NCBI RefSeq assembly: GCF_006345805.1
Contig: NW_021832351.1
Span: 1-50,701, forward strand
Direction: 5' to 3'
Origin: Octopus sinensis
Lineage: Eukaryota
Length of the DNA stretch: 50,701 bases
Part shown: positions 5,633-50,139 of the stretch, piece after piece
How positions within the stretch are numbered: position 1 is the stretch's first letter
How the letters are laid out: every line of letters starts with the position of its first letter
Position numbers and translations under genes: made by a program
Notes under the pieces: model-generated
Told to the model about the DNA's origin: nothing
Database searches by the model: none
The model's input: the letters and a program-made list of their open reading frames with translations, nothing else

Positions 5633-5853
5633 CTAGCACTATGACCTGGCGTTGCCGGGTCATAGTGCTAGTGCATGCATATACAGCTGCGTGCGTGCGC
5701 ACATACACGCGAGTACTGTCCAAATCTCCGACCAATCACATACAGCTAGCTGGCATTCAATTGGCGTATCAAATTTCGGGCATTTTGATTGGGTTTTGGA
5801 TAGAAAATTCACAAAAAAGGCGGCCGTAGGTTGCCCATGACTGGTTTAGGTGA
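5632..5853 (-). mobile_element. Non-autonomous Helitron, 3' end (hairpin + CTAG|T); interrupted by the SINE array
   Basis: Minus strand CCCGGCAACGCCAGG...GCTAG-T matches the 3' end of the Helitron at 19236-19632. Confidence 0.6.
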
Positions 5854-5874
5854 AGGTAAATACGATTCGCTTTG

Positions 5875-7375
5875 TTTAAGGCGGCGAGCTGGCAGAAACG
5901 TTAGCACGCAGGGCGAAATGCGTAGCCGTATTTCGTCTGCCGTTACGTTCTGAGTTCAAATTCCACCGAGTTCGACTTTGCCTTTCATTCTTTCGAGGTC
6001 GATTAAGTAAGTATCAGTTACTGAGGTCGATGTAATCCACTTAATCCCTTTGTCTGTCCTTGTTTGTTCTCCTCTGTGTTTAGCCCCTTGTGGATAGTAA
6101 AGAAATAGGTATTTCGTCTGCCGTTACGTTCTGAGTTCAAATCCGCCGCCGAGGTCGACTTTACCTTTCATCTTTCGAGGTCGATTAAATAAGTATCAGT
6201 TACTGAGGTCGATGTAATCGACTTAATCCCTTTGTCTGTCCTTGTTGTTCTCCTCTGTGTTTAGCCCCTTGTGGATAGTAAAGAAATAGGTATTTCGTCT
6301 GCCGTTACGTTCTGAGTTCAAATTCCGCCGAGGTCGACTTTACCTTTCATCCTTTCGAGGTCGATTAAATAAGTATCAGTTACTGAGGTCGATGTAATCG
6401 ACTTAATCCCTTTGTCTGTCCTTGTTTGTTCTCCTCTGTGTTTAGCCCCTTGTGGATAGTAAAGAAATAGGTATTTCGTCTGCCGTTACGTTCTGAGTTC
6501 AAATTCCGCCGAGGTCGACTTTACCTTTCATCCTTTCGAGGTCGATTAAATAAGTATCAGTTACTGAGGTTGATGTAATCGACTTAATCCCTTTGTCTGT
6601 CCTTGTTTGTTCTCCTCTGTGTTTAGCCCCTGTGGATAGTAAGAAATAGGTATTTCGTCTGCCGTTACGTTCTGAGTTCAAATTCCGCCGAGGTCGACTT
6701 TACCTTTCATCCTTTCGAGGTCGATTAAATAAGTATCAGTTACTGAGGTCGATGTAATCGACTTAATCCCTTTGTCTGTCCTTGTTTGTTCTCCTCTGTG
6801 TTTAGCCCCTTGTGGATAGTAAAGAAATAGGTATTTCGTCTGCCGTTACGTTCTGAGTTCAAATTCCGCCGAGGTCGACTTTACCTTTCATCCTTTCGAG
6901 GTCGATTAAATAAGTATCAGTTACTGAGGTCGATGTAATCGACTTAATCCCTTTGTCTGTCCTTGTTTGTTCTCCTCTGTGTTTAGCCCCTTGTGGATAG
7001 TAAAGAAATAGGTATTTCGTCTGCCGTTACGTTCTGAGTTCAAATTCCGCCGAGGTCGACTTTACCTTTCATCCTTTCGAGGTCGATTAAATAAGTATCA
7101 GTTACTGAGGTCGATGTAATCGACTTAATCCCTTTGTCTGTCCTTGTTTGTTCTCCTCTGTGTTTAGCCCCTTGTGGATAGTAAAGAAATAGGTATTTCG
7201 TCTGCCGTTACGTTCTGAGTTCAAATTCCGCCGAGGTCGACTTTGCCTTTCATCCTTTCGGGGTCGATTAAATAAGTACCAGTCTACGCACTGGGGTCGA
7301 TATAATCGACTTAACCCGTTTGTCTGTCCTTGTTTGTCCCCTCTTTGTTTAGCCCCTTGTGGGTAGTAAAGAAAT
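5875..7375 (+). mobile_element. Family A SINE: one head plus 8 head-to-tail ~181-bp body units, flanked by a 21-bp TSD
   Basis: Units start at 5928, 6109, 6290, 6471, 6650, 6831, 7012 and 7193. AGGTAAATACGATTCGCTTTG occurs at 5854-5874 and 7376-7396. Confidence 0.95.
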
Positions 7376-7728
7376 AGGTAAATACGATTCGCTTTGCTTT
7401 GCAGTTTTTTTTTTCTGTGAGACTTTTGGTGGCTGACTTTCAGGAAATATCAGATGAACGAATTTACTTGGGGGTTAAGTGTGGGATAATTATTTCCGAT
7501 TGTTATCGCTGTGTGAAGTATTTACTGTTCGTCTGTGTTGCTGTTGTTGATGTTGACGTGGCTAATTTCTCTATATTATTAAACAATTTGTTTTGTAGTT
7601 TTTGTTGTTACCCTTTTACTGTGTTTGTTATTCTTCATTTTATGTTGTTTTTGTTTGTTTGTTTTTTTTCGTTTACTTATTTGATGCTTTTTCTTTTCAC
7701 TCTTATGCGTTGTTTTATTTTCTATAGT

Positions 7729-11677: not shown

Positions 11678-11684
11678 CACACAC

Positions 11685-11816
11685 CCACTCCTGCGCCTCA
11701 ACACACCCACTCCTGCGGCTCCACACAGCCACTCCTGTGTCCCCACACAGGCACTCCTCCGCATCCACACACCCACTCCTGTGACTCCACACAGCAACTC
11801 CTGTGCCTCCACACAG
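11685..11816 (-). repeat. 22-bp minisatellite x6 derived from the family C SINE 5' end
   Basis: Unit (rc) AGGCGCAGGAGTGGCTGTGTGG matches the first 22 nt of the SINE at 46304 and (rc) near 21416. Confidence 0.9.
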
Positions 11817-12528
11817 CCATTCTGGCGGTATTATTATTATTATTATTATTGTTATTAGTCTTTTTCTCTTTATTATTATTGCTGCTCTTTCAGTTGTCGT
11901 TGTTGTTGTTGTTGTCGTTCTTGTTGGTTATGTAATGAACTCTGCTGCTGCTGCTGTTGTTGTTGTTGTTGTTGCTGCTGCTATTAATAGAGTCGTATTG
12001 TCATTGTTGTTGAAGTGACGAAATGCTCGTTGAGACGGTGATGGTAGCAATGGGAGGGAGGGAGGGAGGGAGGACCGACAAAGAATAGAATATGTTTGGT
12101 GGTGGTGGTGGTGGTGGTGATGGTGTTAGTGGTCGACGATGGCGTAAGAATTGCGTTCTACTTCCTTCATCACTTTTGCTCTGAAACCTTTCCGCTTTCG
12201 TTCCTCCCTAGAATGGGATCTTGAAAATATCAACTCACAAACAATGCTTCCCTCCATCGACACCATCTCCCGCCCCTCATTTCCTCCACCACTGCAGGCG
12301 TCGCCGTTGCCTCCCACCCCCGCACAACAGCAACCACAGGCTAATGAGGAATTTATTACGTGGTCGTTCATTCTGCTAGAAATAGTAGACAAACCCTCCT
12401 CTCAAATTACAGATTCACTTCTTAGAAAGAAATCTGCTTGTCTCTCGTCTGTCTATTGTCCTCAAGGTTTTGTGTTCGGCATTGGTGGCCAATAAAGAAA
12501 GAACTACCACCACCACCACCACAAACGA

Positions 12529-12700
12529 ATTAAGTCGATTATATCGACCCCAGTGGGTAACTGGTACTTATTTAATCGACCCCGAGAGGGTGAAAGGCAA
12601 AGTCGACCTCGGTGGAATTTGAACTCAGAACGTAACGGCAGACGAAAAACCTCTTAGCATTTCGCCCGGCGCCCTAACGTTTCTGCCAGCTCGCCGCCTT
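12529..12700 (-). mobile_element. Family A SINE, 3'-truncated
   Basis: Reverse complement of head AAGGCGGCGAGCTGGCAGAAACG through the central domain. Confidence 0.9.
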
Positions 12701-12754
12701 ATATACAAATCATTCATTAGAACAGGAAAAACGCTAATATAAATTTTAAACTGT

Positions 12755-13202: not shown

Positions 13203-13274
13203 TCCCATGTAGTCTAGTGGTTAGGATTCCTGGCCTTCACCCAGGCGGCCCGGGTTCGATTTGCGGCATGGGAA
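13203..13274 (+). tRNA. tRNA-Glu(TTC) gene or recent pseudogene
   Basis: Acceptor stem TCCCATG/CATGGGA and anticodon arm CCTGG-CCTTCAC-CCAGG; near-identical to eukaryotic tRNA-Glu. It has U33C and one T-stem mismatch. Confidence 0.8.
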
Positions 13275-13288
13275 CGCGTACTTATTTA

Positions 13289-13529
13289 AAGGCGGCGAGC
13301 TGGCAGAAACGTTAGCAAGCCGGGCGAAATGCGAAACCGTATTTCGTCTGCCGTTACGTTCTGAGTTCTGAGTTCAAATTCCGCCGAGGTTGACTTTGCC
13401 TTTCATCCTTTCGGAGTCGATAAATTAAGTACCAGTTATATACTGGGGTCGATGTAATCGACTTAATCGCTTTGTCTGTCCTTGTTTGTCCTCTCTGTGT
13501 TTAGCCCCTTGTGGATAGGAAAGAAATAG
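13289..13529 (+). mobile_element. Family A SINE, full length
   Basis: Head through AAAGAAATAG tail; internal TTCTGAG duplication. Confidence 0.92.
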
Positions 13530-14314
13530 GTACTGCATATGATGAGGGGCGCATGCAACCATTCATAACCTCATTGTTATATAATCATCTCATTCATATT
13601 CGTTTTATGTATTGTCCCCTCTGTGGTGTCCTGTCTGTTCTTGTTTGTCCCCCTCTATTTTGGGCCCTTGTGGCTAATAAAGAAACTTGTAAACATTTAT
13701 TGACGCAAGTTGAGGTATGCTTGTGTTCTTATTTTTTAAGACGGTAGGCTGTAATTTTAGGGAAATTTAGCTACTATTTCTAGAAAGGCGAGTGACCATG
13801 TAGAGACTCGTTTGTTGCCTAGTGGTAGGAGTAGTAGTGGTGGTAGTGGTTGTGATTGGGGTGGTAGGATGTGATAGAAACTTATTGTTTATGAGTTTGA
13901 AATTTTCTAGTAATTTCCTTTGTAAGGGAAGAACGGAAATATCTACAGCGTTTCTTGAACCACACACAGCAACCCCACAAGTGTTCTGTGGTATGGGATT
14001 TAGTGTGTATACAATGTATGTTTGAGGGATGAGGAGTTTAGGGGAGTAGGTGATGATAAAAGTAGATTATATATAGAACACAATGTGACATTAAAAAAAT
14101 AGATTACGCAGACAAACTCACAAACAAATAAGTAATTGTCGACAATTCCGACAAATGAGCATCACATGGATAAATATAGATAGAGATAAATAGATAGATA
14201 GATAGAGAGAGGAAGAAGAGGAGTGAGAGGGAGGGAGGGAGGAAGAAAGATAGATAGATAAATCAACAGATTTATATATATATATATTATATTATATATA
14301 TGTATACAGAGAGA

Positions 14315-18408: not shown

Positions 18409-18641
18409 ATCTATTTCTTTACTACCCACAAGGGGCTAAACACAGAGAGGACAAACAAGGACAGACAGACGGATTAAGTCGATTATATCGACCCCGGTGT
18501 GTAACTGGTACTTATTTAATCGACCCCAAAAGGATGAAAGGCAAAGTCGACCTCGGTGGAATTTGAACTCAGAACGTAACGGCAGACGACATACCGCTAA
18601 GCACTTCGCCCGGCGTGCTAACGTTTCTGCCAGCTCGCTGG
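18409..18641 (-). mobile_element. Family A SINE with ~54-bp flanking direct repeat
   Basis: Flank 18355-18408 is repeated at 18642-18699 with a 4-bp insertion. Confidence 0.9.
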
Positions 18642-19235
18642 CTTATATCTACCTACTTACCTACATAACTACCTACCTACGTAACTATCTAACCTACCTT
18701 CTTACCTATCTATCAACCTACATGCTTACGCACGTACGTACATAAATATACACAACGATATACACAAGCACACATCGCGCGTGCGCATACATACATATTC
18801 AGTTTGTTGCTAGTTCAAAATAATCTCATTAAAAGAATATTTCCTTTAAAATAATAAAAAAAAAAAACCTGTAAGTTGATCCACGTTTCATTCATGCTAA
18901 TTAAGCGTTAGTGTATCTTAGAAAAATAAGTTAATGATTAAGAACTCATTAAAATATTTCTCAACGTCGTATTATGTGCAGGAAATTCTAGAGTAACTTC
19001 CGTTATGACGAGCATCTCCTCAACAGACGGCAGGTATAGCACTCACTTATAACAACTTGATACAAACTTGAATTCATTTTCTTTTATTATTAAATTATTC
19101 ATGTTCAGTGAGTGGTCGTTAGGTGGCGGATAAAATAACTAGCTTAATGCTTACTTGTTTCTCTCGTTGTTCTGAGACCAAAATCTCCAAAGGCTGAGTT
19201 TGTCTTTAATCTCCTTCCGCGAGCCATAATATAAA

Positions 19236-21253: not shown

Positions 21254-21962
21254 CGACAGGCTTCTCTCAGTTTCCGTCTACCAAATCCACTCACAAGGCT
21301 TTGGTCCGCCCGAGGCTATAGTAGGAGACACTTGCCCAAGGTGCCACGCAGTGGGACTGAATCCAGAACCATGTAGTTGGTAAGCAAGCTACTTACCACA
21401 CAGCCACTCCTACGCCTATATATATATTTATTTTATTATAAATGCCAAACACCACACCACACCACACACTCGCCTCCCGAGTTTCATTTTCCATACAATA
21501 TGTGCGATTCTTTGTTTACTCATCTATGGTACACTAGGTATTTTCTTTTAATATATTTTAATTAATGTGTTATATTGTGCAGTACTGTACTGTATTTTTA
21601 TTTATTGGTTTTTAGGCGTGAAATAATACCTCAGAAATAATTAAAAATCTAAGGAAATATAAATAGCTATCGGCCGCAGAAACCCGTCGTATACTGAGGA
21701 GTCCGTGATATAAATATACATATATTAGCCAGAAATATCTGCGATGGACTGAGGGCGCGAGAGGTGAACCGCGATAAGACGAATGGTTTCTGTACCTGTA
21801 TATTACACACATAGCAAAAAGACTCTAACCCACATCCTAACACCTCCTTCGGCACCGCCCACACTCACACCCACTGGCTACACACGCACACACACACACA
21901 CACACACTCGCATGCGCTCACATATGAACATACACCAGGCGTACACATGCATAAACAAATGC

Positions 21963-23042: not shown

Positions 23043-25172
23043 AAAGATATGAATTACAACAAATAGAACTGACAAGGTACTTAGTGTATCATTTACACGG
23101 TTGATCGTACTAAACTGCATGACTTTGTCATTTGAATCTGCAAAACCAACCCTACGGCTGAGAATTAGAAGCTCAGCACATCAACAATGCATTTTTCCTC
23201 TTTCCAAGGCCATCTGTTAATTAGAGCAGAAACAATGTACTCAGAAGGTGTGCCGTTTTTATTTTACATGTGTACTAGAGAGATCTGATTTCGCTAAAGA
23301 GTATCAGATCGAAACCGTGTAATTTGATGCGTGTTACTTAAAAGGCAATAACAAATAACCACGCTTCAAGGCTTCTTGTATTTCCACAACCGGCCTTCAA
23401 TAATATTATGGCTGAGACTGAAACAATAAACAAAATGGTTACTTACTCAACACGCTCTAAAAGCAATCAAGGCCCTACCTCATCATGTTCCTACCTTATC
23501 AAGGGCCTACGACATCAAGAGAAGAGGTTTATGATTTTAGTATAGATATCAGATTCATTTTTCATAAACCTCCGACCTGCCTTTGCTTGCTTGAGATGTC
23601 TTTTATATCATACCGCACTATCACGATAATAATAATGATTTTTGTTTCGTTTTTGCTTTTGTCATTTCTTTTACAACCTCCAACTTCTCTCTAAAATCTG
23701 TGACAGTTGGTGTCTAAGCATACACAATCCATATCACAGCAAGTGTGTTTATTTTCTTGTGTCTTTTGGCTGGTTTCTTGTTTTTCTTTTTTTTTTTTAA
23801 TGTTGACTGTAATTTCATTGCCACAGTCGTCAGTGTTGTTGCGCCGTGCTTTTCAAGTAACAAAATTAAGATTACAGTCTTTTTCCTCTTTATTCTTACT
23901 AGTATCTAAGGCGGCGAGCTGGCAGAATCTTTAGCACACCAGACAAGATGTCTCCCAGCATTTCTTCCAGTTTTACGTTCTGAGTTCATATTCCGCCGAG
24001 GTTGATTTTGACTTTCCTTCCTTCCTGATTCATTATATAAATTACCTGTAAACACTAATGGAACAGTGGAGTCGATGCGATCGACTATCCTCGTTTCCCC
24101 AAATTTCAGATCCTGCACATGTGGGAGAAAACGAAAGAGTTCTTAGGCGAGGGTTGGATAAAGCACTTTGCGGCATTTCCCTCAATTCATTACATTCTAA
24201 ATCGAAACCCCACCGAGGTACACTTTGCCTTTCACCCTTTCGAGGTTAATAAAATAATTACCACCCTGCTCAAATTGCCGACCATGTGTCAATATTTAAA
24301 ACCGTTCTTTGTCGTGTCTTTGTTCCAGTTAGAATGTTTTGTAGTGTCAGTATTGCTAATAACAGAAATATTACAATACGCTTTTGGGAATTTCTAAACG
24401 ATGGACGTGGGATTTTAATTGCCTTTTCGCAAAAAATACAAAGAGAAACAAAAATGACTGCTGCTATTTAAGTTAGTAAATTGGCTGCCGCCTTTTTCAC
24501 GATTCCTCACCCACTATTAACGCTGTAGCCATTTTGAAGAGAATTCCTGTGGTGCAGGCAGAAATAAAGGAAAATAAAATGTCTTCCTGTAAATAGGAAG
24601 GACTTATAATTAGGTTTGAAGCATCTCCACTGTTATTACATAGACTGTATATACACACGAAAACTCATTAACTTCAGAGAAAACGCATGTAACTCAAACT
24701 ACGAGATGCTCCAATATAAGAATTTTTCACGGTGAAATCCAAGAAGCGGCAGCAGCAGTAGTAGTGGTAGTAGTAGTAGTAGTAGTAGTAGTGTAGTAGT
24801 AGTAGTAGTAGTAGTATGAGGGAATGTGCTGTAACAGCGCTTTGCTGCATCCACCATTTGTACGTGATTCCATAACTCCTGGCAGATGAAACTTTTGCAT
24901 CACTCAGGCAAAACCCCTCCAGCCCATGGGTCTGTTTGGGTGTTCGTTGCTGGTGACCGTTTTACAAGGTCAAAGTGCAAATCCTACCTCAGCCTCTTTT
25001 AGTCGCCTTTTACGACTCGCAGGGGAAACATCGGGGTCTATTCTTTGATGCGCCAGTCCCCATGCAGCACGATGGAGTGAGCGGATGGGGTTGAGGGGAA
25101 GACCATACTGCTGCAAAAAGCTATGACACACACACAAGCATACACGCACAGTGGGAGAGAGAGAGAGGAGAG

Positions 25173-31556: not shown

Positions 31557-31824
31557 TCCTATGATGGTTGTTTCGTGCTTAAGGAGAAGGCTTGCTTGGT
31601 TCAATAACTCTGAGAGCAATGTCGCCGAGAGCCGAACTCTGGCTAGCGTTATCCATGGTAACAAGATCGAAGGAAACGATCCAAAGTGAACACGACCAAA
31701 ACTGTCTCAAGACCTTGCGGCAGTAGTTAACATTTGACTTCAGTAACGTTTGAACTGTCGGATAAGGGCAACGACAGACGTGCTGGTGCGATTCGGCACG
31801 TAATCGATTTAACGGCAATATATT

Positions 31825-31998
31825 AGTTTCTACTCTTGGCACAAAATCCGAAATTGTGCGGGGAGTGGGCCAGTCGATTAGATCGACCCCAGTAAGGCAA
31901 AGTCGAACTCGGCCGAATTTGAACTCAGACGGTAAAGACAGACGAAATACTGCTAAGTATTTCGCCCGGCGTGCTAATGTCTCTGCCAGCTCGCCGCT
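31825..31998 (-). mobile_element. Family A SINE (alternative tail), internally deleted
   Basis: Reverse complement of family A head, with the GCACAAG...TAGAAA-type tail. Confidence 0.85.
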
Positions 31999-32016
31999 TA
32001 TCAACAGCAATATATT

Positions 32017-32398
32017 CTTTTCTACTCTAGGCACAAGGGGGAGGGGGCCAGTCGATTAGATCTAGCTCAGTACACAACAGGCACTTAATTTATCGATCCC
32101 GAAAGGATGAAAGGCAAAGTCGATCTCGGCAGAATTTGAAATCGGAACGTAAAGACAGACGAAATACCTATTTCTTTACTACCCACAAGGGGCTAAACAC
32201 AGAGAGGACAAACAAGGACAGACAAACGGATTAAGTCGATTATATCAACCCCAGTGCGTAACTGGTACTTATTTAATCGACCCCGAAAGGATGAAAGGCA
32301 AAGTCGACCTCGGCGGAATTTGAACTCAGAACGTAGCGACAGACGAAATACCATTAAGCATTTCACCTGGCGCGCTAATGATTCTGCCAGCTCGCCAC
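32017..32398 (-). mobile_element. Family A SINE heterodimer (tail-1 unit joined to tail-2 unit)
   Basis: Junction GAAATAC|CTATTTCTTT at 32161-32177 is the reverse complement of the array junction. Confidence 0.9.
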
Positions 32399-33780
32399 AT
32401 TTCAATGGCAATATATTGCCACTTCTTCACTTGCTACTGTTTGCCTCATGCTGCGTCACATGTGTCACTGAATATGGTTCTTAAATCATAGTGTGAGACT
32501 CAGTCCTGGGAAACTTGAAAACCATCATTTATAGAAATGTTCACATCTAATCACCTGTCTGATTAGATGTGAGCACCTCTGTAAATTTACGTTTGAAGCC
32601 TGGTTTCAATGAGCTATTGGTACCAGTGCTCATATACTATTAATGGCACTTCGAGAACTATGGAAACAAATCGTATTTCTTTTCTCCTATGGAACTAAGC
32701 CATCATACTTATGTAAAAACCACAAGGACATTCCATAAATACCTACATTTACATATGTACATCTGTATTTGTCCCCGTGTGGAGTATTATATAATTATAA
32801 ATATGCTGTGGTTTTATTTAGAATTTTTTTTCTATTTAATCTCATTAGTAGCTATAATTATGAATATTTTTGAGAAAGTTTTTGTCCTCACACTATACAT
32901 TGCAGCCCCACACCGAATTTTATTATTATTATTCCAGTTTATTTCGTTCATTTGCTTCTGCATTTTTTTGGCGTTTCACAAACAAACCTTATAATTTGAT
33001 CTCAGCAAAACTAAAAGTGTCAAGTTTGCATAGTTCAAGTGGATAGTTGTGGTTATCATTATTTTCTCACCGATATTAACTCATTATGTCCCAGAGTTTT
33101 TAAATTTCTGAATATCACTTCTAAATTTTTACAGATGAATGAAAACGGGTTAAATTGAAACAAATTAATTATTAAAACTCCTTTACTTCAAGTAGAAATG
33201 GAAATACTCAGTGTCCCATAAATAGGACACTGAGACAATATGATATATCTTATTTAATGTTTTCATCTAGTGTCCTATTTATAGAACAGTATGACTTAGT
33301 GGGTTAAGAAAAAAAAAATGACGTTTCCGACTGGAATTTATACAGCGTTAACAACTTTTCTCATCCAGATTTCAATGAAATATTTCGTCCTTTTACGATT
33401 CTAACATCATGACGGCTATCTTTTCGTATAGCATACCGGATGTTCAAACAGCCAATGTTTACCCAAGATCCCTGACTTTAGTCTCCCACAAAAGAGAAGC
33501 AATATAACAATGTTCTACCCTTCAAATGTTTGATCAATATTTTTTCTTATACGATTCATTGATATTTCCATTCAGCTGTCCTTTCGACAATGGATCACAG
33601 AGGACCTGACGGTACAAGTCTGCAACACTTCAATATATAAAGAATGGTACAAATGCCCCCAAATTTAGATGTCTTGGTGTCTGATTTAATTGATTGTCTA
33701 ATCATTATTGTACAGGTAGAGTCAGCCTTGATCTTTGAAGGTATTTTGTGGTTTAGTCTCAAGCCAGCTCGATTATGGTT

Positions 33781-34015
33781 AAAGGCGGCGAGCTGGCAGA
33801 AACGTTAGCACACCGGGCGAGATGCTTAGCGGTATTTCGTCTGCCTTTACGTTCTGCGTTCAAATTCCGCCGAGGCCGACTTTGCCTTTCATCCTTTCGG
33901 GGTCGATTAAATAATTACCAGTTACTCACTGGGGTCAATGTAATCGACTTAATCCGTGTGTCTGTCTTTATTTGTACCCTCTGTGTTTAGCCCCTTGTGG
34001 GTAGTGAAGAAATAG
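33781..34015 (+). mobile_element. Family A SINE with 16-bp TSD
   Basis: TCGATTATGGTTAAAG at 33769-33784 and 34017-34032. Confidence 0.93.
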
Positions 34016-34396
34016 TTCGATTATGGTTAAAGACCTACGATTTAAGGTATTCCAGCTGTCAATATCTGTTTTTTTATTTTGTTTATGTAGGACTACGCTT
34101 TTCAAGGATGATGGGGTACCGTATGAGAGAACTTGACTACTATTTCTAGCAGATCATCCGACTAGTTGAGGACCACACTACATACGCAGGCATTTAATAA
34201 TTTATCCTATAGGGATTAGTGAAGTAATCTGGGTTTGTTTCATTCTCTCCACTGATCGTTCTGTCTTGTAATCCTGGAGATCTCGTTGTTGCCATAGTGA
34301 GGTGGGGATGTAAGGAAGGCTCAGTTGCTGCTCTGCTCACCCATAGAGGATGATTCATGATTTCACACTTAGCTGCAAGAGTAGGTTCTGAATAGG

Positions 34397-43508: not shown

Positions 43509-44034
43509 TTACCAGTGAGCTACAATGAAAAGCATGAGAAACATATGATATATTATTTATTTTTTGTGCAGGAGTTCCTTGCAACGCGTAATTTATTTTA
43601 AGGGGTACGCAAGGGTAAAAATTGTTGAGAAACACTACAATATACTAAGGTGCTTTGCTAAACGCTTTTTCTTTCTGAATGTTTGAGTACAAACTCCGCC
43701 GAGCTAGAGTTTGTCTTTCATTCTTTCGAGGTTGATAAAATAAATGTCAGTCGGGAGCTCAGATACCAAGGTTGCTGATCTTGCCTTTCAACCGTCTACG
43801 ATCAATAAAATCAATATCAGTCAAGTACGAGGTTCAATACAACCGAATGATTCAATATAACCGAATGATCGCTACTAGAAAGAGAAAGTTCATTTTGAGG
43901 CAAGGATTGAAAATTCACCAAAACAGTCAAATCTACAGCAAATATAGGTTAACAACTATACTAGATCTAATACAGCCAGATGCTTTGAATCGGCTACACT
44001 TGTTTATCGTTCGTTCATTACTCTACGGCCATTC

Positions 44035-46303: not shown

Positions 46304-46720
46304 AGGCGCAGGAGTGGCCGTGTGGTAAGTAGCTTGCTTACCAACCACATAGTTCCGGCTTCAGTCCCACTGCGTGGCACCTTGGGCAAGTGTCTTCTAC
46401 TATAAGCCTCAGGCCGACCAAAGCCTTGTGAGTAGATTTTGTAGACGGAAACTGAAAGAAGCCCGTCGTATGTATGTATGTGTATGTATATGTTTGTGTG
46501 TCTGTGTTTGTCCCACCCCCCCAACATTGCTTGACAACCGATGCTGCTGTGCTTACGTCCCCTTAATCCAGCGGTTCGGCAAAAGAGACCGATAGAATAA
46601 GTACTAGGCTTACAAAGAATAAGTCCTGGGATCGATCTGCTCCACTAAAGGCGGTGCTCCAGCATGGCCGCAGTCAAATGACTGAAAGAAGTAAAAGAGT
46701 AAAAGAGTAAAGAGTAAAGG
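46304..46720 (+). mobile_element. Family C SINE, full-length reference copy
   Basis: Head AGGCGCAGGAGTGGCCGTGTGG, B-box-like GGCTTCAGTCCC, CORE-like CACCTTGGGCAAGTGTC, internal microsatellite, (GTAAAAGA)n tail. Confidence 0.92.
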
Positions 46721-47204
46721 GAACAAAAGGAAGCCGGCTGCTGTAGGATCTGAAATAATGGGCGTAAAGTGCCATAGTCTAGTCACACTTTGTAGGAATT
46801 TGGTGATTTAGAGATTTTAAATATCTACTGTTTCAGGAAAATAATCTATTTAATGCCAATCTCTAGTGTAGATAAGCAGCTACTCCTTTTGGGAAGGTTA
46901 ACGCTCGTATTAGTCAGATCCAACCTGTGAGGTTATCCGGGGTGGTACTATAAAGAGAAAACTACAACACCTCAATTCGGCACTTATCCTCCTTCGAGTT
47001 ATCTGATTACAACGGCCCTACTATGTGATCGGCTCTTGTTTTATCAACCCCGAAAGCATGAAAGGCAGGTCTGATTTTGCTGGGATTTGAACTCAGAACG
47101 TACAGAGCCAAAATAAATGCCAATCCACTAATTGTATTTGATAAAATAATGGCACCATCCATGTGCAGAGGTCGGTAATGTCCTTTCTCCTAAAATATCT
47201 TTTA

Positions 47205-47400
47205 TCTGTTTCGGTCGTCAGATTGCGGCCATGCTGGGGCACTGCCTTGAAGCATTTGTAGTCGAATCAATCAACTCCAGTAGTTAGCTTTTCTAAGCCT
47301 GATATTTATTCTATCAGGTTTTCGTCTCCCCGCCGAACTGCTGAGTAACGGAGACATAAACACAACACCAGTTGTGAAACGATTGTGACTGACAAACACA
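47205..47400 (-). mobile_element. Family C SINE 3' half, degenerate
   Basis: Reverse complement of the CAGCATGGCCGCA tail region. Confidence 0.7.
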
Positions 47401-47759
47401 GACATACACATACACACACTTGTGTATGTGTGTATATATATATATATTGATTCTGTAGGGTATATAATACCATTTGCTAAAATCAGAGCCAACGCTCCAA
47501 AAACCACCATAAACTCACGATAAAGTTACACACGAGCAATGCAATACACATATGAGAAACAGGCTTACCTTTGCATTGAATACATCAGTAAGTAATTTAT
47601 ATTTCAATATCAATTGTTTTCATGTTTTGCATGACAAACATGCTCTGCGATCTTCAGTTGAAAATAACATTTTAACATCTATTTCTAAAATATTCACTAC
47701 ATTATCTCGTGTGCGTTTCTTAATTTAAACGTCCTGCTTCGTTTAAAAGAAAACTATGT

Positions 47760-48566: not shown

Positions 48567-49249
48567 CAGACACCACGTGTTTCTGTGTTTGTCAGTTACA
48601 ATCGTTTGACAGCTAGTGTTGTGTTTACATCTCCGTTACTCAGCTGTTCAGCGGGGTGGGAGGGACCTGATAGAATAAATATCAGGCAAAGAAAAGATAA
48701 TTACTGGAGTTGATTGATTCGACTACAGATGCGTCCAGGCAGTTCTCCAGCCATAACTGAAACAAAAGATAAAAGATATTTTAGGAGAAAGGACCTTATC
48801 GACCTCTGTAAATGGATGGTGCCATTATTTTATCAAATACAATTAATGGATTGGCATTTGCTTTGGCTCTGTACGTTCTGAGTTCAAATCCCAGCAAAAT
48901 CAAACATGCCTTTCATTCTTTCAGGGTTGATAAAACACAGAGCCGATCACACAGTGGGGGCCAATGTAATCGGATAGCTCTTTCCGAAAGCTTTTAGTTT
49001 TGTGCTTTAACTAGCCACAATCGTTTTAGTAAAGTCAGGGTTGAATTTAACTACAAAAGGATTTCAACACCGAGCCTCAAGAAGCATAACTAAATATGAG
49101 TTCTGACCAAAAAGTATAAGTTCAGTTGTTATAGTGACGGAACTAAAGGCTGCTTAGCTCAGATTGACCTTGAACTGTCGCGCATGTGGACAAAGTTATA
49201 ATGGTCTCGCACATTTCTGATGTTTAATGCAGTACTTGGGTGTGGGTGT

Positions 49250-49924: not shown

Positions 49925-50139
49925 CCCGTATATTGAATATACGTAAGAACTAAAAAGACGCTGTCAAAACACACATACATCATCCCCCACACATACGCGC
50001 GAACACACAAACATACACATACGCACACACTCGCGGCATTTCGTCCGTCTTGAAGTTCCGAGTTCAAATGACGCCGAGATCGACTTTGCCTTTCATTCTT
50101 TCAGAATTGTTTGAGCCGAGCAAAAAATAAAAAAAAACA

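What the first reader, a model, noticed from the sequence alone, without database searches (positions are those of the whole stretch)
5854..7396. Eight-unit SINE concatemer within a single TSD, with a structurally suggestive junction
Seen: one head, then eight ~181-bp units each restarting mid-tRNA-head (GTATTTC) directly after the 3' end (AAAGAAATAG), with a 21-bp TSD around the whole array. The 3' end GAAATA is complementary to the re-entry site TATTTC, which in the monomer pairs with GAAATGC in a head hairpin. Units 2-7 are near-identical, unit 1 differs slightly, and unit 8 is consensus-like. No TTTT Pol III terminator was seen in the unit. Inference: multimers arise from a circular or multimeric RNA, or from a structure-guided RT jump (retrozyme-like, but with no visible ribozyme), followed by recent DNA-level expansion of one unit.
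Basis: partly seen in the sequence, partly recalled or inferred. Interest (0 to 1): 0.8.

Follow-up and report, generated by a model that had tools for sequence, protein, structure and literature searches.

The report
Eight-unit SINE-derived tandem array
A short retrotransposon (SINE) sits here as one head followed by eight copies of its body inside a single insertion scar; this kind of SINE-derived tandem array is already known, but the join between copies looks as if it was made during reverse transcription and only later multiplied by ordinary DNA slippage.

Summary
One 48-nt head (5880-5927) is followed by eight units of about 181 bp (5928-7377). Each unit joins the complete SINE 3' end (…AAAGAAATAG) to internal position 49 (GTATTTC…). 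A perfect 21-bp target-site duplication flanks the whole array, and the 1.5-kb element has no T4 run.

It is a SINE-derived tandem array, a kind already described in squamates, bivalves and plants.

New here:
- The same junction occurs at a second locus (32168|32167, minus strand). There it joins two different SINE subfamilies inside that locus's own duplication.
- In the focal array, the head plus units 1-7 carry markers of one subfamily and unit 8 those of another (P about 5e-6). The founding dimer therefore had two sources. It was not an in-situ duplication or a copy of one RNA circle.
- Units 3, 5, 6 and 7 are identical, so most of the copy number is recent DNA-level amplification.
- Position 49 lies at the top of a conserved 12-bp hairpin. 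It is the only truncation point whose RNA 5' end pairs with the 3' terminus.
- No ribozyme was found.

Best reading: a reverse-transcriptase template jump, then unequal exchange. A self-targeted insertion is a live rival. Interest is moderate.

The parts
5854..5874 (.). Left copy of the 21-bp target-site duplication AGGTAAATACGATTCGCTTTG
   Evidence: Exact 21-mer found only at 5854 and 7376 in the window
5875..5879 (+). TTTAA spacer between the duplication and the head. Together with G5880 it forms the T(T/A)AAG motif that precedes every copy of this family
   Evidence: Sequence read
5880..5927 (+). SINE head, positions 1-48 (GGCGGCGAGCTGGCAG…). It is present once only
   Evidence: nhmmer with a family profile matches model positions 1-233 at 5880-6109; all later units start at model position 48
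5911..5938 (+). Head hairpin, positions 32-59: 12-bp stem, 4-nt loop UAGC. The re-entry base G49 (5928) is the second base of the 3' arm
   Evidence: Minimum-free-energy structure and pair probabilities; conserved in 10 copies, with 2 pairs kept through changes on both sides
5928..6108 (+). Unit 1 (positions 49-233). It carries the derived U1-7 changes but keeps G in TTTGCC, and has 6 private substitutions
6109..6289 (+). Unit 2
6290..6470 (+). Unit 3 (identical to units 5, 6 and 7)
6471..6649 (+). Unit 4 (179 nt; one substitution and two 1-bp deletions)
6650..6830 (+). Unit 5
6831..7011 (+). Unit 6
7012..7192 (+). Unit 7
7193..7377 (+). Unit 8. It is consensus-like and belongs to a different subfamily from the head and units 1-7. 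Its last two bases (AG) overlap the right duplication
7376..7396 (.). Right copy of the 21-bp target-site duplication
7405..7414 (+). T10 run, the first possible Pol III terminator downstream of the array
32168..32397 (-). Second locus: full-length A-type SINE ending in …AAAGAAATAG
32016..32167 (-). Second locus: B-type SINE body. It starts at position 49 (GTATTTCG…) directly after the A-type 3' end and has a different tail (…GCCTAGAGTAGAAAAGA)
32398..32416 (-). Second locus: duplication copy 1, ATATATTGCCATTGAAATG
31997..32015 (-). Second locus: duplication copy 2, ATATATTGCTGTTGATAAG
31824..31996 (-). Second locus: separate full B-type SINE with an internal deletion. It is followed by duplication copy 3 (31805-31823, ATATATTGCCGTTAAATCG)
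13291..13530 (+). Monomer of the same family. It shares six diagnostic states with the focal head and units 1-7
18411..18641 (-). Monomer with a target-site duplication of about 50 bp, inside a TAGG microsatellite
33784..34015 (+). Monomer with the 16-bp target-site duplication TCGATTATGGTTAAAG (33769-33784 and 34017-34032)

Best explanation
This is a non-coding SINE-derived tandem array with no evident function. It was built in two stages.

**Stage 1 (inferred).** During one target-primed reverse transcription event, the partner LINE's reverse transcriptase copied a consensus-type SINE RNA from its 3' end. This copy is now unit 8. The enzyme stopped at position 49, at the top of the 12-bp head hairpin. 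Either the RNA had been cut there, or the refolding hairpin ejected the cDNA end. The enzyme then jumped, without sequence overlap, onto the 3' terminus of a second SINE RNA of another subfamily and copied it to its 5' end. The 3'-terminal GAAAUA of the acceptor can pair with UAUUUC at positions 50-55 of the donor, which would hold the two ends next to each other. The product was head + unit + unit inside one 21-bp target-site duplication. This architecture matches U6-L1 template-switch chimeras.

**Stage 2 (shown by the unit relationships).** The upstream unit accumulated changes. It was then amplified at the DNA level, by unequal sister-chromatid exchange or replication slippage, to seven copies. 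Four of these are still identical. The edge units (1 and 8) stayed outside the homogenised core.
For: 1. The array, the junction, the target-site duplication and the absence of T4 runs are confirmed.
2. The junction uses the exact 3' terminus seen in monomers with unrelated flanks: AAATAG followed by GTAAAT, GTACTG, ATAGGT or TTCGAT. That end has meaning only as an RNA end or a priming point.
3. The identical junction at 32168|32167 joins an A-type element to a B-type body with a different tail, inside that locus's own duplication.
4. The focal founding dimer had two sources. U3 and monomer 13291 share 4 of their 9 and 10 substitutions (simulation P about 5e-6). They also share the head states G43 and C48. 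U8 has none of these and is closer to unrelated copies than to its array-mates.
5. Position 49 is the second base of the 3' arm of a hairpin predicted with probability near 1 and conserved in 10 copies.
6. Of 180 possible truncation points, only 48-51 give an RNA with a terminal panhandle. The summed pair probability is 5.8 of 6 at positions 49 and 50; the median over all points is 0.02.
7. U3 = U5 = U6 = U7, and U1-7 share derived changes that U8 lacks. This is the edge-versus-core pattern of arrays evolving by unequal exchange.
8. Template-switch chimeras (a full-length acceptor followed by a 5'-truncated donor, flanked by one duplication) are documented for the L1, L2 and RTE clades (PMC4476161).
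Against: - Only two junction-bearing loci could be examined. No further copies of this genome could be reached.
- The terminal complementarity is 6 AU-rich base pairs (-4.2 kcal/mol). In full-length RNA it loses completely to the head hairpin (pair probability 0.000). It could act only on a 5'-processed RNA or on a stem opened by the enzyme.
- The panhandle test is post hoc: about 4 of 180 positions qualify.
- There is no microhomology at the junction to show a jump.
- The target sites of this family often begin with (AG)GTA, and SINE positions 48-51 read GGTA. An insertion into a resident copy explains the same junction (see rivals).
- The papers on comparable arrays favour unequal homologous recombination (PMC11481361, PMC10702118).
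- No RNA data exist.
Confidence: 0.45

Rival explanations
1. Self-targeted insertion. The partner endonuclease prefers sites beginning (A)GGTA or GTA, and the SINE itself carries GGTATTT at positions 48-54. A new SINE copy was primed at a nick at 48|49 of a resident copy (head + unit 8). The 3' part of the new cDNA, complementary to the head, annealed to the resident head lying directly upstream. The net result is the addition of one body unit with no extra duplication. DNA-level amplification followed, as in the main model.
For: - The duplications start with AGGTAAAT (focal), AGGTAGGT (18411) and GTACT (13291). In each case these bases are also present in the upstream copy, so they come from the target.
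- Two of four independent flanks begin with GTA. The chance is about 0.002 by my own calculation from the base composition.
- This reading explains the heterodimers at both loci equally well.
- PMC4476161 states that tripartite chimeras can arise either by double template switching or by a second retrotransposition into the first insertion.
Against: - The motif rests on 3 of 5 sites.
- This family makes target-site duplications of 16-50 bp. A normal insertion at 48|49 should leave a nested structure with a duplicated internal segment and a second head. None is seen in the window.
- The model needs a homology-assisted resolution at both loci.
Confidence: 0.22
2. Multimeric master copies. The junction arose once, or a few times. 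Dimers lack an internal Pol III terminator, so they are transcribed whole and retrotransposed as dimers. Both loci would then be descendants of such masters.
For: - The element has no T4 run, so read-through of several units is possible.
- Both loci have the same junction to the base.
- SINE-derived satellite variants with one uniform unit at many loci are known (PMC10702118).
Against: - The two loci are two different heterodimers: 13291-like + consensus-like, and A-type + B-type with another tail. Their heads are quite different. Each would need its own master.
- Units after the first lack the A-box region of the head.
Confidence: 0.1
3. Purely DNA-level origin. A monomer was duplicated in place by slippage or unequal exchange at the 3-nt microhomology GTA. 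This GTA is shared by position 49 (GTATTT) and the first bases of the 3' flank (GTAAAT). The duplicate was then amplified. The second locus would be a coincidence.
For: - In the focal locus the flank does begin with GTA, so the junction AAATAG-GTA-TTTC could be made this way.
- Other SINE-derived tandem repeats with other breakpoints lie in the same window: a 22-bp unit at 11678-11819, and a core duplication at 43649-43853.
- The literature favours unequal recombination.
Against: - An in-situ duplication gives identical founding units. Instead, the head plus U1-7 and U8 carry the markers of two subfamilies (P about 5e-6).
- The second locus has the same junction with an unrelated flank and joins two subfamilies.
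- A DNA breakpoint has no reason to fall on the exact SINE terminus twice.
Confidence: 0.08
4. Circular RNA, or rolling-circle reverse transcription (retrozyme-like). A unit-length RNA (positions 49-233) is circularised, or its paired ends let the enzyme run round it repeatedly, giving a multimeric cDNA in one insertion.
For: - The unit-length RNA is predicted to close its ends in a 6-bp panhandle.
- Animal non-LTR retrozymes are tandem units of similar size (bioRxiv 10.64898/2026.07.22.740005).
Against: - No hammerhead or other self-cleaving ribozyme matched at E<=10 on either strand over 5800-6500, nor at gathering score over the whole window.
- The founding units differ in subfamily at both loci. 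One circle cannot give that.
- The unequal ages of the units do not fit one multimeric cDNA: 0 differences among four units against 6 to 11 substitutions for the edge units.
- A circle of 49-233 cannot supply the head.
Confidence: 0.04
5. The copy number is an assembly artefact: a dimer or short array inflated by mis-assembly of near-identical units.
For: - Three consecutive identical units span 543 bp.
- Several differences in units 2 and 4 are 1-bp indels in homopolymer runs, typical of long-read errors.
Against: - Units 1, 2, 4 and 8 are distinguishable, and the array is anchored on both sides by unique sequence and a perfect duplication.
- The junction itself is seen independently at the second locus.
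Confidence: 0.08

Closest known systems
SINE-derived satellites (sSats) of squamate reptiles (Vassetzky et al. 2023, PMC10702118)
   Same: - Tandem repeats are made from a portion of a SINE, with a longer terminal unit that runs to the SINE terminus.
- Units of about 130-215 nt can include the B-box part of the head, the body and the 3' part.
- Short loci of 2-8 units are common.
- Longer arrays are more homogeneous.
- The same unit structure recurs at many loci.
   Different: - Host and SINE family differ.
- Here the unit ends exactly at the SINE 3' terminus, and the array is bounded by one intact target-site duplication.
- The founding units come from two subfamilies.
- The squamate paper proposes unequal homologous recombination or repeated insertion, not a template jump.
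TSD1-(SINE)n-TSD1 arrays in the blood clam Scapharca broughtonii (Martelossi et al. 2024, PMC11481361)
   Same: - The array sits inside a single target-site duplication.
- The first element has a complete head, and the later units share one head truncation.
- The last unit has a complete tail.
- Arrays have 4-15 units.
- The other array type, TSD-(SINE-TSD)n, is also seen here at the second locus.
   Different: In the clam the internal units are also truncated in the 3' tail, so the breakpoint lies inside the element on both sides. Here every unit keeps the complete 3' terminus, which points to an RNA end.
LINE template-switch chimeras such as U6-L1, also U6 with L2 or RTE (Doucet et al. 2015, PMC4476161, citing Buzdin et al. 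2002 and 2003)
   Same: A complete acceptor RNA copy is followed directly by a 5'-truncated donor copy. Both have the same orientation, and one target-site duplication flanks the pair. The jump lands on the acceptor's 3' terminus.
   Different: - Here donor and acceptor are both SINEs of one family.
- The donor breakpoint is fixed at position 49, whereas L1 truncation points vary.
- The product was later amplified as DNA.
Animal non-LTR retrozymes and Penelope-like element pseudo-LTRs (bioRxiv 10.64898/2026.07.22.740005)
   Same: Head-to-tail tandem units of a few hundred nucleotides, thought to arise through RNA and reverse transcription.
   Different: Retrozymes are defined by a hammerhead ribozyme in each unit. 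None was detected here. This element instead has SINE-type variable target-site duplications and a Pol III-like head.

Membership tests
SINE (Pol III-transcribed, LINE-dependent short retroposon) | Short, non-coding, dispersed in many copies | tested here: met
   The consensus is 233 nt. A family profile finds 27 segments in 50.7 kb, including 5 near-full-length copies outside the array. There is no ORF above 60 aa.
SINE (Pol III-transcribed, LINE-dependent short retroposon) | Flanked by target-site duplications of variable length | tested here: met
   21 bp (focal), 16 bp (33784), about 50 bp (18411) and about 19 bp (second locus).
SINE (Pol III-transcribed, LINE-dependent short retroposon) | Head derived from tRNA, with A and B boxes | tested here: inconclusive
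   - ARAGORN and the Rfam tRNA model do not detect the head, even at E<=10.
- The best A-box and B-box matches are 8 of 11 each; GAGTTCAAATTCC is B-box-like.
- The central hairpin has 12 bp, unlike a tRNA anticodon arm.
SINE (Pol III-transcribed, LINE-dependent short retroposon) | 3' tail shared with a partner LINE | not testable with these tools
   No LINE is recognisable in the window. A tail-only fragment at 13631-13686 could be a 5'-truncated partner or a truncated SINE.
SINE-derived satellite / SINE tandem array | Head-to-tail repeats of a SINE portion, with a terminal unit that extends to the SINE end | tested here: met
   One head plus eight units covering positions 49-233.
SINE-derived satellite / SINE tandem array | The same unit structure recurs at several loci of the genome | tested here: inconclusive
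   Two loci in this window have the identical junction. The rest of the genome could not be reached.
LINE reverse-transcriptase template-switch chimera | A complete acceptor copy joined at its 3' terminus to a 5'-truncated donor, in the same orientation, within one target-site duplication | tested here: met
   This holds at both loci. Donor and acceptor are of different subfamilies.
LINE reverse-transcriptase template-switch chimera | Made in a single retrotransposition event | not testable with these tools
   This needs allelic or orthologous intermediate states. A second insertion into a resident copy gives the same sequence.
Non-LTR retrozyme | A self-cleaving hammerhead ribozyme in each unit | tested here: not met
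   cmscan against all 4227 Rfam families gave no ribozyme match, at gathering score over the whole window or at E<=10 on both strands over 5800-6500.
Non-LTR retrozyme | Circular RNA intermediates | not testable with these tools
   There are no RNA data. The heterodimeric founding units argue against a single circle as the template.

The most novel reading that the evidence does not exclude
The SINE RNA is cut, or reverse transcription is blocked, at the top of its conserved head hairpin. The remaining RNA (positions 49-233) has self-complementary ends (UAUUUC…GAAAUA). These ends hold a 3' terminus next to the enzyme as it runs off the template. The partner reverse transcriptase therefore re-initiates there, either on another SINE RNA or on the same one. 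This would be a ribozyme-free, structure-guided route to multimeric retrocopies, and it would regularly seed SINE-derived satellites with one fixed junction.
Probability: 0.15. Interest if true: 0.7.

Novelty: new member of a known kind. Interest (0 to 1): 0.4.

Why it matters
How tandem satellites are first seeded from dispersed repeats is still argued. The published SINE-derived arrays are attributed to unequal recombination without direct evidence.

This locus, with its neighbour at 32 kb, separates the two stages within one array. The founding junction bears the marks of reverse transcription: an exact RNA 3' end, partners from two subfamilies and a single target-site duplication. The later amplification bears the marks of DNA exchange: identical core units and diverged edge units.

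If a genome-wide census confirms a fixed 233|49 junction, this family would be a tractable system. It could be used to test template jumping by a stringent-type LINE enzyme and to ask whether RNA structure sets the unit boundary of a young satellite. If the census shows mixed junctions, this is an ordinary SINE-derived minisatellite.

Tried and rejected
**Searches for more copies of this genome**
1. I scanned metagenome contigs with the 15-nt junction. The pattern was too short: 120 chance hits, none containing the SINE on BLAST.
2. I scanned viral and prokaryotic genome contigs with conserved 22-25-mers of the SINE. There were no hits.
3. I searched the protein collection with a 73-aa stop-free translation that spans the junction on the minus strand, hoping for ORF calls on host contigs. 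It gave one hit, a 543-bp metagenome contig (L121) with a monomer of the same family and no junction.
4. No convincing coding ORF exists in the window, so orthologous loci could not be reached through a protein.

**Identity and literature**
5. Searching papers for the SINE's own sequence strings gave only chance matches.
6. Rfam and ARAGORN detected neither a ribozyme nor a tRNA in the element.

**Mechanisms considered and rejected**
7. A homology-driven switch or deletion using the GAAAT shared by the tail and the 5' arm of the hairpin would give AAAGAAAT|GCTTAGCGGTATTTC, which is not the observed junction.
8. Pairing of the cDNA 3' end with the acceptor 3' end fails because the two have the same sense and are not complementary.
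9. Fold-back priming would give inverted copies, not direct ones.
10. A solo copy beginning near position 46 at 50033 might be a 5'-truncated run-off product. It follows a CA-rich microsatellite and has a different 3' part, so it is not usable evidence.
Full report
**What is there**

Tandem Repeats Finder reports a single array at 5928-7380 with period 181, 8.0 copies, 97% matches and score 2682. The sequence and a family profile search show one 48-nt head at 5880-5927 (GGCGGCGAGCTGGCAG…). Eight units follow, starting at 5928, 6109, 6290, 6471, 6650, 6831, 7012 and 7193.

Each unit covers positions 49-233 of a 233-nt element. Each junction reads …AAAGAAATAG|GTATTTCGTC…. The junction 15-mer occurs seven times in the array and once elsewhere; shuffles give 0.13 matches.

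The 21-mer AGGTAAATACGATTCGCTTTG occurs exactly twice in the window, at 5854-5874 and 7376-7396. It brackets the whole array. Its first two bases (AG) overlap the last two bases of the element. There is no T4 run in the 1.5-kb element. A T10 lies 26 nt downstream of the element, at 7405-7414.

**What kind of element it is**

The window holds further copies of the same family:
- 13291-13530 (+).
- 18411-18641 (-), with a target-site duplication of about 50 bp inside a TAGG microsatellite.
- 33784-34015 (+), with a 16-bp duplication.
- 12521-12697 (-), 3'-truncated.
- More distant relatives that share the core …CCGAGGTCGACTTTGCCTTTCATCC….

Variable-length duplications, small size, lack of coding capacity and high copy number make it a SINE.

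The tRNA origin of the head could not be shown. ARAGORN and the Rfam tRNA model see only a genuine tRNA-Glu gene at 13203-13275. A permissive Rfam scan of 5800-6500 gives no tRNA hit. Box matches are 8 of 11.

The window is very rich in microsatellites (94 TRF rows). It also carries a second SINE family at 21270-21416. I recall that sequence from octopus genomes. That is memory, not a test.

**History of the array**

Units 3, 5, 6 and 7 are identical over 181 bp. Units 2 and 4 differ from them by a few changes, several of them 1-bp indels in homopolymer runs. Unit 1 differs by 6 substitutions. Unit 8 differs by 11 substitutions and 2 indels, yet it is only 6 substitutions and 1 indel from an unrelated copy at 32168-32397.

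All of units 1-7 share about nine substitutions, a 4-5-bp deletion and a 1-bp insertion that unit 8 and the other genomic copies lack. Units 2-7 share one more change. The order was therefore:
1. A founding structure of head + unit a + unit 8.
2. Changes accumulating in unit a.
3. The split of unit 1.
4. A very recent multiplication giving units 2-7.

Identical core units with diverged edge units are the usual signature of unequal exchange or slippage.

**The founding junction was not made in place**

Where units 1-7 differ from unit 8, they match monomer 13291-13530 at four body positions. Unit 3 has 9 substitutions and the monomer 10 against the majority of the other copies, and 4 are shared in the same state. 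Simulation gives P about 5e-6. One of the four lies next to the deletion and depends on the alignment.

The focal head shares two further states with that monomer, G43 and C48. Together they turn a U·G pair at the hairpin top into G-C. Unit 8 has none of these states.

So the head plus unit a came from one subfamily and unit 8 from another. An in-situ duplication of a monomer would start with identical units. So would repeated copying of one RNA or one RNA circle.

**A second, independent locus**

On the minus strand, a full A-type element at 32168-32397 ends in …AAAGAAATAG. It is followed at once by GTATTTCG… of a B-type body at 32016-32167. The B type has its own diagnostic changes and a different tail (…GCCTAGAGTAGAAAAGA).

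This pair is enclosed by two copies of a sequence of about 19 bp: ATATATTGCCATTGAAATG and ATATATTGCTGTTGATAAG. A separate full B-type element (31824-31996) and a third copy of that sequence (ATATATTGCCGTTAAATCG) follow.

The same junction, to the base, therefore joins two different subfamilies at a site with an unrelated flank. This locus also shows the other known array type, in which elements are separated by repeats of the duplication.

**Why position 49**

Positions 32-59 form a 12-bp hairpin with a 4-nt loop. It is predicted with probability near 1 in five of six copies. It is kept in ten related copies, with two pairs maintained through changes on both sides. G49 is the second base of the 3' arm, so the repeat unit starts at the top of this hairpin.

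The 3'-terminal GAAAUA is complementary to UAUUUC at positions 50-55. The duplex is worth -4.2 kcal/mol, against -15.6 for the hairpin arms. In full-length RNA the tail does not compete (pair probability 0.000). An RNA that starts at 49 or 50, however, is predicted to close its two ends in a 6-bp panhandle, with a summed probability of 5.8 of 6.

I folded every possible 5' truncation from 1 to 180. Only 48-51 gave terminal pairing above 3; the median was 0.02. The test is post hoc, though, and amounts to roughly 4 chances in 180.

**Most likely mechanism**

The junction uses the exact 3' terminus that monomers show next to four unrelated flanks. That terminus has meaning only as an RNA end or a priming point.

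A complete upstream copy, a 5'-truncated downstream copy, the same orientation and one target-site duplication together form the architecture of LINE template-switch chimeras such as U6-L1. These are also made by L2 and RTE elements (PMC4476161).

I therefore favour a template jump during one insertion. The enzyme copied the unit-8 RNA, stopped at the hairpin top and resumed on the 3' end of a second SINE RNA. DNA-level amplification followed. The cause of the stop is inferred, not shown. It could be a cut RNA, a blocked enzyme, or ejection of the cDNA end by the refolding hairpin.

**Rivals**

*Self-targeted insertion (0.22).* The duplications of this family begin with AGGTAAAT, AGGTAGGT and GTACT. 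These bases also occur in the upstream copies, so they belong to the target. SINE positions 48-54 read GGTATTT. A new copy primed at a nick in a resident SINE, and resolved by annealing to the resident head, would give the same sequence. The cited paper notes the same ambiguity for tripartite chimeras. Against this reading: the motif rests on few sites, and no nested unresolved form is seen.

*Multimeric master copies (0.10).* These are possible because there is no internal terminator. However, the two loci are two different heterodimers.

*Purely DNA-level origin through the GTA microhomology with the focal flank (0.08).* The two-subfamily composition and the second locus contradict it.

*Circular RNA or a retrozyme-like route (0.04).* No ribozyme was found, the founding units differ, and a circle cannot supply the head.

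*Assembly artefact.* Inflated copy number cannot be excluded without reads.

**Comparison with what is known**

SINE-derived satellites in squamates have the same layout: a SINE portion in tandem, a terminal unit reaching the SINE end, and a unit structure repeated across loci (PMC10702118). Blood clam SINE arrays include a TSD1-(SINE)n-TSD1 type with one complete head and a shared head truncation. There the internal units are also cut in the tail (PMC11481361).

The present array differs in three ways. It keeps the complete 3' terminus in every unit, it shows two-source founding units, and its breakpoint sits at a structural landmark. It is a new member of a known kind. Its value is as a clean case for testing how such arrays are seeded.

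**Limits**

Only two junction-bearing loci were available. All attempts to reach more of this genome failed. No RNA or read data exist. The choice between a template jump and self-targeted insertion rests on plausibility, not on a decisive test.

Noticed in passing
window 31805-32416 (minus strand): Three diverged copies of one target sequence of about 19 bp (ATATATTGC…) separate and flank an A/B chimeric SINE and a second B-type SINE. This is a TSD-(SINE-TSD)n arrangement, and it implies either repeated insertion into the same site or unequal exchange between the duplications.
   Followed up: partly
window 5854, 13286, 18405 (starts of target-site duplications): Three of five 3' junctions of this family are followed by (AG)GTA: AGGTAAAT, GTACT and AGGTAGGT. 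These bases are also present in the upstream duplication copy, which suggests a target preference. The SINE itself has GGTATTT at the re-entry site.
   Followed up: partly
window 5875-5880, 12698-12705, 13282-13290, 18642-18648, 33779-33784: Every copy is preceded by T(T/A)AAG. In two copies (33784 and 18641) the motif lies inside the target-site duplication. In two others (the focal copy and 13291) it lies between the duplication and the head. Duplication lengths range from 16 to about 50 bp. This looks like 5' joining guided by microhomology, or a specific second-strand cut.
   Followed up: no
window 13203-13275: A genuine tRNA-Glu (UUC) gene (46.8 bits in Rfam, also found by ARAGORN) lies 15 bp upstream of a SINE monomer at 13291-13530.
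   Followed up: no
window 13631-13686: An isolated fragment is homologous only to the last 55 nt or so of the SINE tail (…CCCTTGTGGCTAATAAAGAAAC), 100 bp downstream of a full SINE. It may be the 3' end of a strongly 5'-truncated partner LINE.
   Followed up: no
window 11678-11819 (also 21270-21416 and 46306-46330): A 22-bp minisatellite (6.5 copies, with a 66-bp higher-order period) is made of the first 20 nt or so of the head of a second, unrelated SINE family (GGCGCAGGAGTGGCTGTGTGG…). Full or partial copies of that family lie at 21270-21416 and near 46306. This is a second SINE-derived tandem repeat in the same 50 kb, with a quite different breakpoint.
   Followed up: partly
window 23910-24300: Two different SINE relatives abut head to tail, with only TTAG between the 3' end of the first and the head of the second (about 24140-24145).
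   Followed up: no
window 43649-43853: A diverged relative contains an internal tandem duplication of the conserved core: model positions 33-139 are followed directly by 72-171.
   Followed up: no
window 47037-47407 and 48577-48937: An inverted repeat with arms of about 370 bp (85-93% complementary), 1.2-1.5 kb apart. Each arm contains a diverged SINE relative.
   Followed up: no
L121 (ENA ERZ23499442, scaffold_285125, 543 bp): A short metagenome contig carries a monomer of this same SINE family next to the 3' part of the second SINE family. Host DNA of this or a related species is therefore present in that metagenome sample.
   Followed up: no
whole window: Microsatellite density is very high (94 TRF rows in 50.7 kb, mostly TA, CA, GA and ATAC types). 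G+C is 37%, and there is no convincing coding ORF.
   Followed up: no
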